A stretch of 64,000 nucleotides of DNA from Calcarisporiella thermophila CBS 279.70 (taxonomy: Eukaryota > Fungi > Calcarisporiellomycota): assembly GCF_041956535.1 (NCBI RefSeq), contig NW_027192196.1, positions 514,921 through 578,920 of the forward strand, given 5' to 3'. Numbering within the stretch: position 1 is the stretch's first letter; each line of letters opens with the position of its first letter. The notes under the pieces were generated by a model that saw only the letters and a program-made list of their open reading frames with translations, was not told the DNA's origin and ran no database searches. Below are positions 58,531 through 64,000 of the stretch, piece after piece. The translations under genes and the position numbers were made by a program.

Positions 58531-59993
58531 ATGAACATTAGCGGGCAATCCCGATCATCGCTCGACCTCTCGTCTCAACTGAATCGCCTCTCATCCGCCG
58601 TCCCCTCGCCTATGATTTCGCCCACATCTCCCTTCACCCTCAATTCCCCCTGTCTCGAGCCTGAATTTATTGGACTGGGGACTAATCTGCAGACCTACTC
58701 ATCCATGAACGCCCACCAGAACGGGAATAGCAACAATAACAAGATGAACACCAACACCTTTGTCCACAAGCTCTACAAGTATGTCTCTTGATGATGACAA
58801 ACGCGTGTCCAGCCCATGGTTGCTGACGGCATCTTGCCCTTTATTTTATTAGCATGGTTATCGATAAAAAACACCAGCATCTCATTTGCTGGAATTACAC
58901 CGGCACCAGCTTCATAGTCGCCAACATTGTGTAAGCTCCCTCTCTCTTTCTCAGCTTGTATTAGGCTTGTTTTCCCTGTCTTCCCCAACTGAACCCATCT
59001 TCTGCTTGCCTTTAAAGCGAATTTGCGAGCGAGGTCCTCCCTATCCATTTCAAGCACAACAACTTCTCAAGCTTTGTGCGCCAGCTGAACATGTATGGAT
59101 TCCACAAGGTGAATCGTTCTCCGCGCGGCCACCGAGCCAGCAGCGAGAACCAGATCTGGGAGTTCTCGCATCCCAAATTTCTTCGCGGCCGCCCCGACCT
59201 CCTCTTTGACATCAAGCGCAAAGCCCTCGACGCCGACTCCCTGCGAAGAGACGCAGGCGATTTACAGGGGATCGTGTCGATGATGCAAGTGGCTCAGTCG
59301 GACATGCTACAGCAGTTAACCGTGTTGCAGGACAACTTTAATGAGGTAGTAAGAGAGTTGGGGGAGACCCGCCGGCGGCAGGCCTTGCAGCAGCAGATGA
59401 TCAAGGACCTCACGGAATTTGTTTCCCAACACCATGGTAACTCATCCTCCATCTCCCCTCCTAGCGGAGGAGGTTGTAGAGAGGGCTTGAAACACTAATA
59501 ACCGTGCTCTATGTTCTCATCAGGTTCCGTTCCCCCGGAGCTTTCGTTCGAACACTACGAGATCAAGCAAGAGGTCGCCCGCCCGTCCACTCTCGGCCAT
59601 TTCGAGAGTGGCGCCGCTTCCGGCCCCGGCCACCCCTTGCCTTTTGAATTCGGGTCAACCGCCGAATCTTGCGAAAAATTCGCCCCCAGTTCAGCCGACG
59701 CGCTTCACCTACAGATCAATGATGCCCCCAAGGCCAACCAGAATCACTTACAGTGGGAGCAGTTGGCCCATGGGTTCCACCAGAGCTTTGCCTCCATCTC
59801 TGGGACTGGCGGCGAGATGCATTCCGCCGCCGAGGGCACCGATGTCATGGAAGAAGGAGGCGGGGGAGGCGGTGGCGGCGGCAGTGGCGGTGATGAGGGG
59901 AAAGTGAAGCAAGGTCACGTGGCGAGCGCGGCCAACGGACTCCTCGAGCACGCTGTATTCTCCTTCCCCCATGACACATCGAATAATACATAG
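58531..59993 (+). CDS. HSF-type DNA-binding transcription factor
   Basis: [38 protein letters not shown] and an HR-A/B-like coiled coil. Multi-exon. Confidence 0.93.
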
Positions 59994-60566
59994 TCGGCAT
60001 GAGGGAGTTACAATCGTATATCAAGATATATAAGGATAACCTAGAGTTTTTTTTTGTGTATGCTATTCTTTGCCGTCACCTTCCCCCTTCTCTCTGCTCC
60101 TCCTCCTCCTCCTCCTCTTCGACTTCTTCTCTGCCAAATCCTTGCTATTATATATCATACATGTTGCTAAACGCTATGATATATTTTTAATCATTATCTT
60201 TTTCTTTTTGTGTTGCGTCCCAAGCAAAAATTTACGGTCGAGAATTCTTTATATTTTTTCCAATGTACTTCCAATTGCTGTTTTCTCCTCATCTTTCTTC
60301 TTGAGTTTCCGAGTCTCTTTTTTCCTTTTCCTTTTTCTTTTTTCTTTTCTTTTTTGTTTTATATGATCACAGTCAGTATAAAGTAGCTTTTTGTTACATT
60401 TATGCGTGGGTTGAAGAAACTCTTCGGGTCTGAATGTCACTGATTTGGATTCATTTCTTTAATGAGTTCACGTGGAATTTTCAAGAATCCGGAGTCGCGT
60501 TTTTCATACGCCCTCGATCCACTTTTTCCCTTTCACTCCCCATCGAGTGCTAAGACGGCCCGCAGC

Positions 60567-62500
60567 ATGCAGCAGCAGTGCCAACTCAAACTGACACACA
60601 GCTTCCGCGAATCCTCGGCCTATGCCCACGTGGACGGTAGTTGGCAACGATTGTTGGGATCTAACCCAGGCTGGGTGGCAAATGCTAATTCCACATTTAT
60701 CGTTGGATTTTAGTAAGCGAGCTGACCTACCGAGGGCTTGTAGACGCATTTAGACGGGTGTTTGAAGATTTTGATGAGTCCTCCTGTCAATTGCAGTGGA
60801 AAGACTACGATGGAGACTGGGTCTGCCTCTCACCAAGTAATTCACCCTTTTTTGCAACTGCTTTGTTTTGAAACATTTAAGTAACGCAATGATGTCATCC
60901 ATTGGGTAATCCAGATGAGGAAGGACTCGATCTCCTGCGAGAGCACAGCAAAAACTCTGGGCACAAACTCCATGTACGATGCAATGCAAGCATTAGAGAG
61001 GTGAGAATAGATTCTTCGTCGACAATCGATCTGCCTATGGCTGCTGATTAATACTTGAATGCGTGGATGTCTTGTGTAGGCGGTGAATCGAGACACCCTC
61101 TCCGTTCCTATGAGCCTGGATAATCTACTAAAATTGTAAGCATCTACCGGAGGATTTTGGCGAAGTCTCCTCTACCTCTGCATCTCACCCCCTCTTTCAA
61201 TCCCCTCATTACCTAGATATTCCTGTAGCATCGACGAAACCTACGATCTCGATCATGCAGTCGTCCGCCTTGGGACCATGGACCGCGTTTTGCTAGCCAC
61301 CAAACCAGGCGAGCCTCAGCTTGTCACCTACACTCGAGAGACGGCCCAATGGCTCCTTGAGACGTTTAGCCACCTCCATGTCTATGTTGCGGATGTCATC
61401 ATCAACAAACCGAAATTTCAACGGGAAAAGTTGCCCAAAGACATTGGGTCACGGCTGCACATGTGGTCGCAGTACAGCTTTCCACAGAACATCGACCTGG
61501 TCATTGTGTTGGGGGGCGATGGCACTGTTCTCTTCGCTTCATGGATGCTGCAAGATCAGATCGTTCCTATCATTGCCTTTAATCTCGGATCTCTCGGGTG
61601 CGCACCAGTTTTTTTTTTTTTCTTTTTATTTCTTTATGACACGAAACGATACCTCTAAAATATGTCAAGCACGGATCTAACTTATGGATTTTTTTTTTTT
61701 TTAGATTTTTGACCATATTCGATTACGATAATCACCGTGAGGTACTCCGCGACATCATTGAAGAACGAAAGACCCGTATGAATGTGCGGATGCGCATCCA
61801 TTGCTCCATTTTTAAGTTGGAGGATAAGCTGGACCAGAAGCAGGCGGTGCTGGATGACATCGACAATAGCCTCAATGGCCCAGGTACATCCAATGGCGAC
61901 GCAGCCGGCGATGCCGCCGGTGCTGATCAAAACTTCGACCACGATTGTACCCCTACAGCCCAATTCCATGTGCTGAATGAGGTTGTGATTGATAGGGGTG
62001 CCTCCCCCAGCATGCTGCAGTTCCATATCTGCATCGATGAGATTCTAGCTGCCTCCATCCTTGCCGACGGCCTGGTACTTGGTGAGTTTCGTGTGGCGAT
62101 GGCAGAGTAGGTAGAATCTTCCGCCTTGCTAAACTCTGCTTGTCTTTTAGCGACCCCCACCGGCTCAACTGCATATTCACTCTCTGCGGGCGGTCCCGTC
62201 GTCCACTCTGGGTTTTCCGTCATCGTTACCCCAATTGCCCCCCACTCTCTCACCTCTCGGCCCATGATTGTTCCCGGCAACAAACGCATCCGAGTGTATG
62301 TCGCCGAGTCCAGCCGCGGGTCTGGCTGGGTGAGCTTTGACGGGCGGAACCGTACTTCGCTGCAGAAGGGCGACTGGCTCGAGATTCGGCCCAGCCATTA
62401 TCCCGTGCTGACGGTGAGTCGGGACGGGCCGAGCCAGGACTGGATCAACAGCCTGAACTCGCAGTTCCATTGGAACAGCCGACGAGAGCAAAAGTTGTAG
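60567..62500 (+). CDS. NAD kinase (Utr1/Yef1-like) with an N-terminal PB1 domain
   Basis: NADK motifs LGGDGT, FNLGSLGFL, LNEVVIDRG, TPTGSTAYSLSAGG and SFDGRNR. Four upstream exons splice in frame and encode a PB1 fold with WKDYDGDWVCL. An alternative in-frame ATG lies at 60462. Confidence 0.85.
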
Positions 62501-63015
62501 ACTGATTTTATTAAAGTTTTTGTGCTTTTCTTTTTTTTTTTCCATTTTGATCCATTTCCCCCCCCCCCCCCACTTTTGATATCGATTTCGTCTTGCTTTG
62601 CCATTGAAGGCGTTCGTTATTTATTTTATGTTATACTACACACACATATAAACAAGTCGATGTATTTTATTTCGCGCGGCCGAAGTAGGTTTCATTGGTC
62701 GGCGAGAGGAGAAGGAAATAATGGGCAGCGCTTGAATATCGGGTAGTAGAAACAAATAGCAGACAAAAAACAGCACAAGAAGAGAGGAAGCGACATCACA
62801 TGCAAAAGAGGGGAAAAACCGTGGTGGATTAAGGGAAAAGAGGGAAACGAAGGAAAAAACGAAGAGCAACATTAAATAAGTCGAGAGATAAAGAATATAA
62901 AAAAAAGAGTCTGACTAGATAGTAAAAGAGAAAAACATTGATCCAACCAAAAACTGAGAAAAAAAAAAATAAAAGTGTCTATGATGGGGACGATACAAAG
63001 TCCGTTGTGAAGGGT

Positions 63016-64000
63016 TTATTTCCTCTCATACTCCACTCGAATCTTCACAAACAGAGTGCTGAACAAGCATCGCTCCCCGTTGGCGTCGTAAAGCGGGAGG
63101 TGGCGATATCCCTCGGGAATCCCCACCAGCGGCATGCAACACCACGCCACCACGTCGTTCATCTTGAGGTCCCGGTCCATCACGTGGAACCGCAGCATCA
63201 AAAGCTCGGGGAGCTCGACGTCGTTCAGAGTGAACTGCACCACCTCATTCCAGGTCGGGTTGAATCCATTGTCCGTCACGGACTTGGACTGATACCGCAA
63301 CGCCACCCCATGTCCAAAGATCTCAATGGAACAAAAGGGGTCGATGACATCGGACGTGCTCACGTCCACAGGACGAGGCAGCTGCTGCGCCGATATCAGG
63401 TGAATCTCCACATGGCGCGGGCATGGTGCTTCCCATGGAGTTTCCTCCTCGGACGGCTCTGGCACCTCGCTTTTGGCTCTCAGAGCCTTGGGCTTGAGCA
63501 CGTACCCCGTTTTCCCGTTCTTCCGAAACATGGCTCGGTTGATTTGCATCCCGCGGTCGAACGTCTGGTAGTTCAACGCGACAAACTGGCATCCCACCGC
63601 CCACAGCGGCAGAGGATCGTAGTTCGACGAGTTGATGCGCAAACCTCCTGGGTATACCCGCGAGAGATATCGTCTGTTGTATTGCACGAAAGCCTCACGA
63701 TTCGACTTGGCCAGACGGAGTGCGGTGCGTTCCGAAAACGAGGAGATCTGGAACTCGTCCTTAACCACTACGAAGGAAGGAGAGAGAGAGAAAAAAAAGG
63801 GGGGAGGGGGGGGGGATCGGTGAGTTTGGCATGGTCTACAGATGGATAGGCGCTCGCAGGGAGCATGGGGGACTCGCGACCTACTTTGAAAGCCTTTGAA
63901 TTTCTTGGCCTTGCAGTACACGACCACGTTCGACAGGGCCTTGGAGATCTTTTGCTCGCCCTTCTCCTCCTTGCTGGACCGCCTCTTCTTCGCCGACTCA
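63016..64000 (-). CDS. PLC1: Phosphoinositide phospholipase C, 3' part (Y-box and C2 domain)
   Basis: LSRVYPGGLRINSSNYDP, GCQFVALNYQTFD, GYVLKP, C2 domain ISAQQLP...DNGFNPTWNE, GYRHLPL. Confidence 0.95.
   Translation of the reverse strand, partial: ESAKKRRSSKEEKGEQKISKALSNVVVYCKAKKFKGFQSRSRVPHAPCERLSICRPCQTHRSPPPPPFFFSLSPSFVVVKDEFQISSFSERTALRLAKSNREAFVQYNRRYLSRVYPGGLRINSSNYDPLPLWAVGCQFVALNYQTFDRGMQINRAMFRKNGKTGYVLKPKALRAKSEVPEPSEEETPWEAPCPRHVEIHLISAQQLPRPVDVSTSDVIDPFCSIEIFGHGVALRYQSKSVTDNGFNPTWNEVVQFTLNDVELPELLMLRFHVMDRDLKMNDVVAWCCMPLVGIPEGYRHLPLYDANGERCLFSTLFVKIRVEYERK

What the first reader, a model, noticed from the sequence alone, without database searches (positions are those of the whole stretch)
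60567..62500. PB1 domain fused to an NAD kinase: a possible scaffold-docked or polymerising NADP(H) supply module
Seen: four exons upstream of the NADK ORF join in frame through about 80-nt GT-AG introns (about 60637-60713, 60837-60914, 61001-61079, 61136-61216). They give MQQQCQLKLTHSFRESSAYAHVDVSELTYRGLVDAFRRVFEDFDESSCQLQWKDYDGDWVCLSPNEEGLDLLREHSKNSGHKLHVRC, continuing into ...GTMDRVLLATK of the kinase. Established: this matches the PB1 ubiquitin-like fold, with the beta1 Lys (QLK) and the acidic OPCA motif (D-x-D-G-D). PB1 domains carrying both faces (p62, aPKC) can self-polymerise head to tail. In fungi, PB1 domains link the NADPH oxidase regulator NoxR with Bem1 and Cdc24. The NAD kinases I know (Utr1, Yef1, Pos5, human NADK) have no PB1. 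Inference: the enzyme may be recruited to the polarity/Nox complex to feed NADP(H) locally for ROS production, or may form regulated filaments.
Basis: partly seen in the sequence, partly recalled or inferred. Interest (0 to 1): 0.88.

Follow-up and report, generated by a model that had tools for sequence, protein, structure and literature searches.

The report
PB1 domain fused to NAD kinase
This fungal gene really does join a PB1 protein-docking domain to an apparently active NAD kinase, and the same unreported fusion is conserved across early-diverging fungi, which hints that NADP production there is controlled by protein assembly or docking.

Summary
Seven exons at window 60567-62500 (+), joined through six GT-AG introns of 69-107 nt, give a 480-aa product. 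It is identical to residues 36-515 of the public protein VTP21DRAFT_9954 of Calcarisporiella thermophila, which is named only "uncharacterized protein".

Residues 1-89 are a PB1 domain:
- Pfam PF00564 scores 17-20 bits, below its 23.6 cut-off.
- A family profile hits solved PB1 domains (Cdc24, aPKC, NBR1, MEK5, p40phox).
- hhalign against the genome's own canonical PB1s gives 97% probability, E 7e-11.
- The AF2 model (pLDDT 87) has the PB1 strand-helix order, and its top Foldseek matches are PB1 structures.

The beta1 Lys and the acidic OPCA motif are both conserved, so this is a type A+B PB1. All NAD kinase catalytic motifs are intact.

The fusion defines a well-supported NADK paralogue clade found in Glomeromycotina, Mortierellomycotina, Basidiobolus and chytrids. 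It was not seen among the Mucorales or Dikarya hits. Public annotations label these proteins only as NADK or hypothetical, and no paper I could search mentions the architecture.

The function of the PB1 is untested. No RNA runs were listed, and the self-pairing co-fold gave no verdict.

Verdict: real, a new variant of a known kind, moderately interesting.

The parts
60567..60636 (+). Exon 1: start codon favoured by homologues (MQQQ...), PB1 strands beta1-beta2. The conserved beta1 Lys (K8) is codon 60588-60590.
   Evidence: The public model P0001 instead starts at ATG 60462, adding 35 non-conserved residues.
60637..60713 (+). Intron 1, 77 nt, GT..AG, with a GCTAAT branch-like site
60714..60836 (+). 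Exon 2: PB1 helix alpha1 and strands beta3-beta4. The OPCA motif W-K-D54-Y-D56-G-D58-W lies at 60797-60820.
   Evidence: Pfam PB1 hit on this exon alone, E 0.0014. The OPCA motif aligns to that of canonical PB1s.
60837..60914 (+). Intron 2, 78 nt, GT..AG
60915..61000 (+). Exon 3: acidic turn, PB1 helix alpha2 and strand beta5 (end of the PB1 fold)
61001..61079 (+). Intron 3, 79 nt, GT..AG
61080..61135 (+). Exon 4: flexible hinge and first half of the conserved linker helix
   Evidence: Hinge pLDDT below 50 and helix at residues 106-116 in the full-length model. The linker motif is conserved in homologues.
61136..61216 (+). Intron 4, 81 nt, GT..AG
61217..61597 (+). Exon 5: second half of the linker helix and the NAD kinase N-terminal domain, with the GGDGT motif
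   Evidence: PF01513 E 1.4e-17. GGDGT is invariant in the family.
61598..61704 (+). Intron 5, 107 nt, GT..AG, splitting the GSLG|FL motif
61705..62081 (+). Exon 6: end of the N-terminal domain, a low-complexity species-specific loop, and the start of NAD_kinase_C (LNEVVIDRG, ADGL)
   Evidence: The loop has pLDDT below 50.
62082..62150 (+). Intron 6, 69 nt, GT..AG, with a TGCTAAAC branch-like site
62151..62500 (+). Exon 7: NAD_kinase_C domain (TPTGSTAYSLSAGGP), the conserved C-terminal tail (DW..L...WN.R..QK) and the TAG stop
   Evidence: PF20143 E 8e-25

Best explanation
The gene encodes one polypeptide. A canonical PB1 domain (residues 1-89 from the MQQQ start) is tethered by a flexible hinge and a conserved helix to a catalytically competent, cytosolic-type NAD kinase. 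It belongs to an old NADK paralogue clade of fungi that carries this PB1.

Shown:
- The fusion is real at the sequence level, and the PB1 fold is supported.
- Both PB1 interaction faces are conserved: the beta1 Lys and the acidic OPCA motif.
- The kinase motifs are intact.
- The clade and its spread across early-diverging fungi are supported.

Inferred: the PB1 works as PB1 domains do elsewhere, through electrostatic front-to-back PB1-PB1 contacts (my odds about 0.7). This would set the assembly state or location of the enzyme, and so where and when NAD+ is turned into NADP+.

Both faces are kept, and NAD kinases are themselves dimers or tetramers. The single most likely mode is therefore head-to-tail self-association, linking NADK oligomers into chains, rings or a network (about 0.4). 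Docking onto other PB1 scaffolds is the main alternative (about 0.3).
For: Gene model:
- The frame and splice sites check out, and the translation is identical to the public protein.
- Homologues are colinear, and a conserved linker motif spans the exon 4/5 join.

PB1 identity:
- Sub-threshold but repeated Pfam PB1 hits on exon 2, P0001, P0003 and P0005.
- The family profile against the PDB returns 13 PB1 chains among 15 hits, best Cdc24 PB1 at E 0.0015.
- hhalign against ten canonical PB1s of the same genome gives 97.1% probability, E 6.8e-11, with Lys and OPCA in register.
- The AF2 model has pLDDT 86.9 and the order strand-strand-helix-strand-strand-helix-strand.
- Foldseek's top hits are NBR1, aPKC, p62/PKCzeta, MEK5, Cdc24 and p40/p67phox PB1s, TM 0.75/0.81.
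- In the ESM Atlas, 28 of 30 feature hits are PB1.

Both faces conserved: K8 is K in 10 of 11 sequences and R in 1. D54 is kept in 10/11, D/E56 in 9/11 and D58 in 9/11.

Kinase: PF01513 and PF20143 score above cut-off. GGDGT, NE..DRG, ADGL and T.TGSTAYSLS.GG are invariant or nearly invariant (90% or more), and the C-terminal tail is kept.

Clade:
- PB1-bearing NADKs form one group with 100% SH-aLRT support on kinase columns.
- The inner branching roughly follows the fungal tree.
- Conventional NADKs of chytrids and Mortierella fall in the other group.
- The genome has three NADK loci.

Tether: the hinge at residues 91-99 has pLDDT below 50.

Precedent for N-terminal control of NADK: the N-terminal tail of the human NADK tetramer is inhibitory (PMC11759006).
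Against: - No RNA evidence: no run was listed, so splicing and the start site rest on comparative evidence and the public annotation.
- Pfam's own PB1 cut-off is not reached (18.4 against 23.6 bits).
- No binding of any kind is shown. The two-copy PB1 co-fold gave no verdict.
- Some A+B-type PB1 domains, such as aPKC, do not self-polymerise (established knowledge).
- Several clade members have predicted proteins without a PB1: Thamnocephalis, and some Rhizophagus irregularis models of 328 and 375 aa. The PB1 may therefore be lost, or skipped by alternative starts, in some cases.
- The Calcarisporiella sequence sits on a long branch.
Confidence: 0.62

Rival explanations
1. Heterotypic docking. 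The PB1 plugs the kinase into the cell's PB1 network, which includes NoxR/p67phox-like regulators, Cdc24- and Bem1-like polarity proteins, and possibly p62/NBR1-like receptors. NADP+ would then be made next to NADPH oxidase or at growth sites.
For: - The genome holds at least 21 PB1-matching places.
- They include Cdc24-like PH_10+PB1 genes and several closely related p67phox/NoxR-like PB1 genes.
- There are NOX2-like oxidase genes at four or five loci.
- First-stage notes report Bem1-like, PX+PB1, p62-like and NBR1 genes in the same genome; these are unchecked.
- Precedent for a regulated NAD kinase sustaining an oxidative burst: the plant calmodulin-dependent NAD+ kinase (bioRxiv 10.1101/521658, listed).
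Against: - No interaction was tested.
- With at least 21 PB1 domains, the prior for any single partner is low.
- A heterodimer needs only one face, yet both are conserved.
- NADPH oxidase recycles NADP+ rather than consuming the pool, so local NADK is not an obvious requirement (inference).
- Dikarya run Nox/NoxR (own knowledge), but no PB1-NADK appeared among their NADK hits.
Confidence: 0.28
2. Cis-regulation. The PB1 (or the PB1 plus linker helix) folds back on the kinase tetramer as an autoinhibitory or allosteric lid. It would be released by a signal, like the inhibitory N-terminal tail of human NADK, and PB1-PB1 contacts would not be the point.
For: - The human NADK N-terminal region is inhibitory (PMC11759006).
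- A conserved helix lies between the PB1 and the kinase.
- The hinge would allow docking and release.
Against: - The residues that are conserved are exactly the ones PB1 domains use for PB1-PB1 contacts.
- The full-length model gives no confident docking: pTM 0.65 and a low-confidence hinge.
Confidence: 0.12
3. Annotation artefact. The PB1 exons and the kinase exons belong to two adjacent genes, or the PB1-like exons are not coding.
For: - There is no RNA evidence.
- Some R. irregularis gene models omit the PB1 part.
- An internal ATG at 61278 could start a PB1-less product.
Against: - All six junctions are in frame with GT-AG introns of 69-107 nt.
- The same colinear architecture is predicted independently in at least 12 species from four fungal lineages.
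- The linker motif is conserved across the exon 4/5 join.
- The PB1 residues show protein-level conservation.
- No stop codon or start context separates the two parts.
Confidence: 0.03
4. The domain is a generic ubiquitin-like beta-grasp, not a working PB1. The Lys and acidic residues would be coincidental.
For: - The Pfam PB1 score is below the gathering threshold.
- Foldseek also lists FERM-F1 and TBCE ubiquitin-like domains at slightly weaker E-values.
Against: - The ten best structural matches are all PB1 domains.
- The profile hits are PB1 only, apart from tektin.
- hhalign gives 97% probability with Lys and OPCA in register.
- The OPCA motif is kept from chytrids to Glomeromycotina.
Confidence: 0.04

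Closest known systems
PB1 domains of p62/SQSTM1, plant NBR1, TFG and Aux/IAA-ARF (type A+B, self-assembling)
   Same: Same ubiquitin-like fold with strand-strand-helix-strand-strand-helix-strand order. One domain carries both a beta1 Lys and an OPCA acidic motif.
   Different: Those domains sit on autophagy receptors, a secretion factor or transcription regulators, not on a metabolic enzyme. Self-assembly is not shown here (one search gave no verdict). Sequence identity to solved PB1s is only 12-21%.
PB1 heterodimer modules of the NADPH oxidase and polarity systems (p67phox-p40phox, NoxR-Bem1-Cdc24, aPKC-Par6, MEK5-MEKK2/3)
   Same: The best sequence-profile hit is the Cdc24 PB1, and the structural hits include p40/p67phox, aPKC and MEK5. 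The same genome encodes NoxR-like, Cdc24-like and NOX2-like genes.
   Different: No evidence that the kinase joins these complexes. The attached enzyme is an NAD kinase rather than a protein kinase, GEF or oxidase organiser.
Fungal NAD kinases Utr1/Yef1 (cytosolic) and Pos5 (mitochondrial)
   Same: Same two-domain catalytic core, PF01513 plus PF20143, with GGDG, NE/D and Gly-rich motifs.
   Different: Those have no PB1. In the trees the PB1-bearing enzymes form their own clade, apart from the conventional fungal NADKs that include Dikarya and Mucorales sequences. Identity over exon 5 to any non-self representative is at most about 44%.
Human NADK with a regulatory N-terminal tail; plant and sea-urchin calmodulin-regulated NAD kinases
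   Same: An N-terminal extension ahead of the catalytic core acts as the place where regulation enters (PMC11759006; PMC9763689 and PMC6593290, listed).
   Different: Those extensions are disordered tails, or calmodulin-, phosphorylation- or palmitoylation-controlled segments. None is a folded PB1 docking domain.

Membership tests
PB1 domain (Pfam PF00564; CAD & PB1 superfamily) | Score at or above Pfam's gathering threshold (23.6 bits) | tested here: not met
   Exon 2 scores 19.0 bits, P0001 18.4, P0003 17.1 and P0005 20.3. P0010 and P0018 give no hit.
PB1 domain (Pfam PF00564; CAD & PB1 superfamily) | Profile-level homology to bona fide PB1 domains | tested here: met
   hhalign of the family alignment A3 against ten canonical PB1s of the same genome (A4): probability 97.1%, E 6.8e-11. 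A profile search of the PDB gave 13 PB1 chains among 15 hits.
PB1 domain (Pfam PF00564; CAD & PB1 superfamily) | Ubiquitin-like beta-grasp fold with strand-strand-helix-strand-strand-helix-strand order | tested here: met
   AF2 model with pLDDT 86.9. Foldseek ranks 1-10 are all PB1 structures; NBR1 2bkf has E 1.9e-5 and TM 0.75/0.81. Atlas structure hits are all PB1 proteins. This rests on a predicted model, not a solved structure.
PB1 domain (Pfam PF00564; CAD & PB1 superfamily) | Type B face: conserved Lys on strand beta1 | tested here: met
   K8 lies in beta1, is K in 10/11 and R in 1/11 family members, and aligns to the canonical Lys.
PB1 domain (Pfam PF00564; CAD & PB1 superfamily) | Type A face: OPCA acidic motif (D-x-D/E-G-D followed by acidic residues) | tested here: met
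   The W-K-D54-Y-D56-G-D58-W motif and following acidic turn are conserved (D54 10/11, D/E56 9/11, D58 9/11). They align to the 'YQDEDGDFV' segment of Cdc24.
PB1 domain (Pfam PF00564; CAD & PB1 superfamily) | Forms front-to-back PB1-PB1 dimers or polymers | tested here: inconclusive
   The two-copy co-fold returned 'no answer', which is neither for nor against. Biochemistry is needed.
NAD kinase (PF01513 + PF20143) | Both Pfam domains above gathering threshold | tested here: met
   P0001: NAD_kinase 84.3 bits and NAD_kinase_C 118.4 bits. The exons score individually as well.
NAD kinase (PF01513 + PF20143) | Catalytic and substrate motifs: GGDG, NE..DRG, and the Gly-rich T.TGSTAYSLSAGG | tested here: met
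   All are present in the window's protein and invariant or nearly invariant (90% or more) across the clade.
NAD kinase (PF01513 + PF20143) | ATP-dependent phosphorylation of NAD(H) | not testable with these tools
   Needs an enzyme assay.

The most novel reading that the evidence does not exclude
PB1-NADK is a previously unrecognised, ancient way of regulating NADP(H) supply in fungi. Its two-faced PB1 would either polymerise NADK tetramers into switchable filaments or condensates, or wire the enzyme into the NoxR/Cdc24/Bem1 PB1 network at growing tips. NADP+ synthesis would then be spatially coupled to NADPH oxidase and polarity signalling. The system would have been lost in Dikarya and Mucorales.
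Probability: 0.25. Interest if true: 0.8.

Novelty: new variant of a known kind. Interest (0 to 1): 0.58.

Why it matters
NAD kinase is the only route to NADP(H), and how cells control it in space and time is still being worked out; so far that is through calmodulin, phosphorylation, palmitoylation and inhibitory tails. PB1 domains are dedicated docking and polymerising modules, known on kinases, scaffolds, autophagy receptors and plant transcription factors.

A PB1 fixed to NADK, with both faces conserved from chytrids to arbuscular mycorrhizal fungi, would be a new regulatory logic for a core redox enzyme. It gives a simple, testable handle: Lys and OPCA point mutants, and a PB1 deletion.

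It also marks a distinct NADK paralogue clade of early-diverging fungi that the published NADK phylogeny I read does not describe (PMC6675116). The clade includes the oil producer Mortierella alpina and the mycorrhizal Rhizophagus, where NADPH supply matters for lipid synthesis.

Current annotation misses the PB1 because it falls just under Pfam's threshold.

Tried and rejected
- RNA evidence: the look-up of sequencing runs on window 60400-62600 listed no run. Splicing, the start site and any PB1-less isoform remain untested.
- Co-fold of two copies of the PB1: score 0.00, verdict 'no answer', controls not run. This is not evidence for or against self-association.
- Region-limited word search with P0001 residues 30-135 found only the protein itself. 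This reflects a sensitivity limit, not absence of relatives.
- The profile search with full-length family alignment A1 was swamped by conventional NADKs. Only 8000 candidates were scored, and several family members used in the query did not even reappear. It therefore cannot define the taxonomic range.
- 'Logan' proteins in the Rhizophagus cluster looked like possible transcript evidence. They proved to be single-exon ORF calls on genomic contigs.
- I looked for a single exon spanning PB1 and kinase in the Synchytrium and Geranomyces genes. Both genes are split by introns. Some exons do bridge the PB1 end and the linker, but none covers both domains cleanly.
- Literature searches for PB1 together with NAD kinase, NADK or Mortierella terms found no relevant paper. 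The search for NoxR in early-diverging fungi returned nothing holding 'NoxR'.
- The Drosophila willistoni hit that ranked high is a tandem double NADK, not a PB1 fusion.
- Joined step left out: I did not hand a hand-joined spliced sequence to any search tool. Exons were searched by reference. After that I used the database's own protein P0001, which a local check showed to be identical to the spliced product.
Full report
**What is in the sequence**

The stretch 60567-62500 on the + strand reads as a fungal-type gene of seven exons:
- 60567-60636
- 60714-60836
- 60915-61000
- 61080-61135
- 61217-61597
- 61705-62081
- 62151-62500

The six introns are 69-107 nt. Each begins with GT and ends with AG, and most have a CTAAC-, CTAAT- or CTGAT-like branch site near the 3' end.

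The joined translation is 480 aa. It is identical to residues 36-515 of a public protein, P0001. P0001 turned up as the 100%-identity hit when exon 5 alone was searched against 1.84 billion representatives. Its source name is 'uncharacterized protein VTP21DRAFT_9954 [Calcarisporiella thermophila]'. The window therefore comes from that thermophilic early-diverging mucoromycete. The genome held here is 28 Mb in 116 contigs.

The public model starts 35 codons further upstream, at ATG 60462. I favour 60567, but only RNA can decide. No public RNA run was listed for this stretch, so splicing rests on comparative evidence.

**Is the N-terminus a PB1 domain?**

Pfam alone says 'nearly':
- Exon 2 by itself hits PF00564 at E 0.0014 (19 bits, cut-off 23.6).
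- Whole P0001 scores 18.4 bits, and two orthologues score 17.1 and 20.3.

Four stronger tests agree that it is:
- A profile of eleven family N-termini (A3), searched against all PDB sequences, returned 15 hits. Thirteen are PB1 domains: Cdc24 at E 0.0015, then aPKC-iota, NBR1, MEK5 and p40phox.
- Profile-profile comparison of A3 with ten canonical PB1 domains taken from this same genome (A4; each over Pfam's cut-off) gave 97.1% probability and E 6.8e-11. The beta1 Lys and the acidic motif are in register.
- An AlphaFold2 model of residues 1-93 has mean pLDDT 86.9 and the strand-strand-helix-strand-strand-helix-strand order. Its ten best Foldseek matches in the PDB are all PB1 domains; NBR1 2bkf has E 1.9e-5 and TM 0.75/0.81, followed by aPKC, p62/PKC-zeta, MEK5 and Cdc24, with p40/p67phox a few ranks lower.
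- In the ESM Atlas, 28 of 30 language-model neighbours are PB1 clusters. The structural neighbours are the PB1s of NLP, NBR1, p62, Cdc24, aPKC and NCF2.

The Lys on beta1 (K8, codon 60588-60590) is K in 10 of 11 family members and R in the other. The OPCA core D54-x-D56-G-D58 (60803-60817) is kept in 9-10 of 11, and an acidic turn follows it. By sequence this is a two-faced (type A+B) PB1.

**Is the kinase a real kinase?**

Exons 5-7 hit NAD_kinase and NAD_kinase_C far above threshold. The motifs GGDGT, LNE..DRG, ADGL and TPTGSTAYSLSAGG, and the C-terminal DW..L..WN.R..QK tail, are invariant or nearly invariant (90% or more) across the family.

The full-length model shows:
- a well-formed core;
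- a low-confidence hinge at residues 91-99;
- a short conserved helix at 106-116, ahead of the first kinase strand;
- a disordered species-specific loop at 294-319.

Nothing suggests a dead enzyme, but activity is untested.

**Is the fusion conserved?**

Yes. The same N-terminal domain followed by the same linker and NADK core was found in these species:
- Rhizophagus irregularis, R. diaphanus and R. clarus
- Funneliformis caledonium
- Mortierella alpina
- Lunasporangiospora selenospora
- Modicella reniformis
- Basidiobolus ranarum
- Synchytrium microbalum
- Geranomyces variabilis
- Rhizophlyctis rosea
- one unnamed assembly

A linker motif (L-x-x-x-Y...) is conserved across the window's exon 4/5 junction. 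That is direct support for joining the PB1 exons to the kinase exons.

On kinase columns only, the PB1-bearing enzymes form one group with 100% SH-aLRT support. Inside it, chytrids separate from Basidiobolus, Mortierella and (Calcarisporiella + Glomeromycotina), roughly as in the fungal tree. Conventional NADKs of chytrids, Mortierella, Mucorales and Dikarya form the other group.

With more representatives, a 100%-supported clade of 15 holds all nine PB1 rows. It also holds six short or PB1-less models, among them Thamnocephalis. The PB1 has therefore been lost, or missed by gene prediction, in some members.

M. alpina has both kinds of NADK, and this genome has three NADK loci. Together this points to an old paralogue inherited vertically and not seen among Mucorales or Dikarya hits. 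'Not seen' is not proof of absence, because the word-based search was saturated and the root is not fixed.

**How it most likely works**

Three things are shown: a folded PB1 with both canonical faces conserved, a flexible tether, and an intact NADK. The rest is inference. PB1 domains are known only as modules for front-to-back PB1-PB1 contacts, so I put about 0.7 on that being the job here.

Both faces are conserved over the whole clade, and NADKs are themselves oligomers; human NADK is a tetramer (PMC11759006). The single most likely mode is therefore self-association that links NADK oligomers head to tail (about 0.4). The main rival is docking onto other PB1 proteins (about 0.3). A cis-inhibitory role like the human N-terminal tail comes third (about 0.1).

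The parts exist:
- The genome has at least 21 PB1-matching places.
- These include Cdc24-like PH_10+PB1 genes.
- They also include a set of closely related PB1s. At least one of these lies on a p67phox/NoxR-like protein, which matches NCF2 residues 175-250 at E 3.4e-6.
- There are four or five NOX2-like oxidase loci; one open frame matches cytochrome b-245 heavy chain at E 2.4e-80.
- Unchecked first-stage notes add Bem1-like, PX+PB1, p62-like and NBR1 genes.

A regulated NAD kinase sustaining an oxidative burst has a plant precedent (10.1101/521658, listed).

Against the idea, no contact was tested, and Nox recycles rather than consumes NADP. Dikarya also run Nox/NoxR (my own knowledge), and no PB1-NADK appeared among their hits. 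The idea stays open at roughly one in four.

**Novelty**

The proteins are in public databases but are named only ATP-NAD kinase, NAD+ kinase, Yef1p, hypothetical or uncharacterized. Their precomputed Pfam domains list only the two NADK domains.

Full-text searches for PB1 or 'Phox and Bem1' together with NAD kinase or NADK found no paper. The eukaryotic NADK phylogeny paper does not mention PB1 or these taxa (PMC6675116). I could not query InterPro, where more sensitive PB1 signatures may already flag some members.

I rate it a new variant of a known kind: two well-known domains in an undescribed, conserved combination that defines an unrecognised NADK paralogue clade.

- Exons were searched by reference.
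- No hand-joined sequence was sent to a search tool. The identical database protein P0001 was used instead.

Noticed in passing
window 60462-60566: The public gene model starts at ATG 60462, adding 35 residues (MSSRGIF...). No homologue shares them, and all orthologues begin a few residues before the PB1 beta1 strand. ATG 60567 is therefore the likelier start.
   Followed up: partly
window 63016-63927 (-), continuing beyond 63927: The convergent downstream neighbour is a phosphoinositide-specific phospholipase C. The open frame has a PI-PLC-Y domain (E 4e-40) and a C2 domain (E 2.4e-14). The gene continues upstream past a probable intron near 63780-63850 that holds a long G-run.
   Followed up: partly
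G000 genome-wide; loci L001-L012: The PB1 repertoire is unusually large, with at least 21 matching places. It includes about four Cdc24-like PH+PB1 genes (L001, L002, L010, L011). It also has about six very similar PB1s (L003-L007, L012), at least two of which (L005, L012) follow a p67phox/NoxR-like activation segment.
   Followed up: partly
G000 C21:238391-238926, C26:292398-292935, C22:314633-315092, C11:482369-482854, C12:284268-284612 (L017-L024): There are four or five NOX2/gp91phox-like NADPH oxidase loci, in two or three sequence types. One open frame matches human cytochrome b-245 heavy chain at E 2.4e-80. This looks like an expanded Nox system for a 28-Mb fungus.
   Followed up: partly
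P0013 (Modicella reniformis KAF9930082.1, 698 aa): The model seems to be a mis-fusion. About 340 residues of a multi-pass membrane-like protein precede a PB1 that lacks its first strands, and the product is cut short in the kinase.
   Followed up: no
Rhizophagus irregularis cluster (P0151-P0156): Different isolates and annotations give 454-aa models with the PB1, and 328- or 375-aa models of the same gene that begin inside the linker or late in the PB1. The PB1 exons are inconsistently annotated in public records.
   Followed up: partly
P0171 (Drosophila willistoni LOC6640738 isoform X3, 860 aa): This protein carries two tandem NAD kinase cores; both Pfam domains match twice. That is why it ranked near the top of the profile search. 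It has no PB1.
   Followed up: partly
window 61609-61625, 61690-61702, 62566-62579, 63796-63815: There are long homopolymer runs: T runs inside intron 5, a C run in the 3' flank, and a G run in the PLC gene's probable intron. The intergenic stretch 59950-60550 is AT-rich (32-39% G+C) with CT-rich tracts.
   Followed up: no
L009 (G000:C2:1047298-1050519): A long run of N (withheld or unassembled sequence) lies inside the open frame upstream of one PB1 domain, so that gene cannot be read in full.
   Followed up: no
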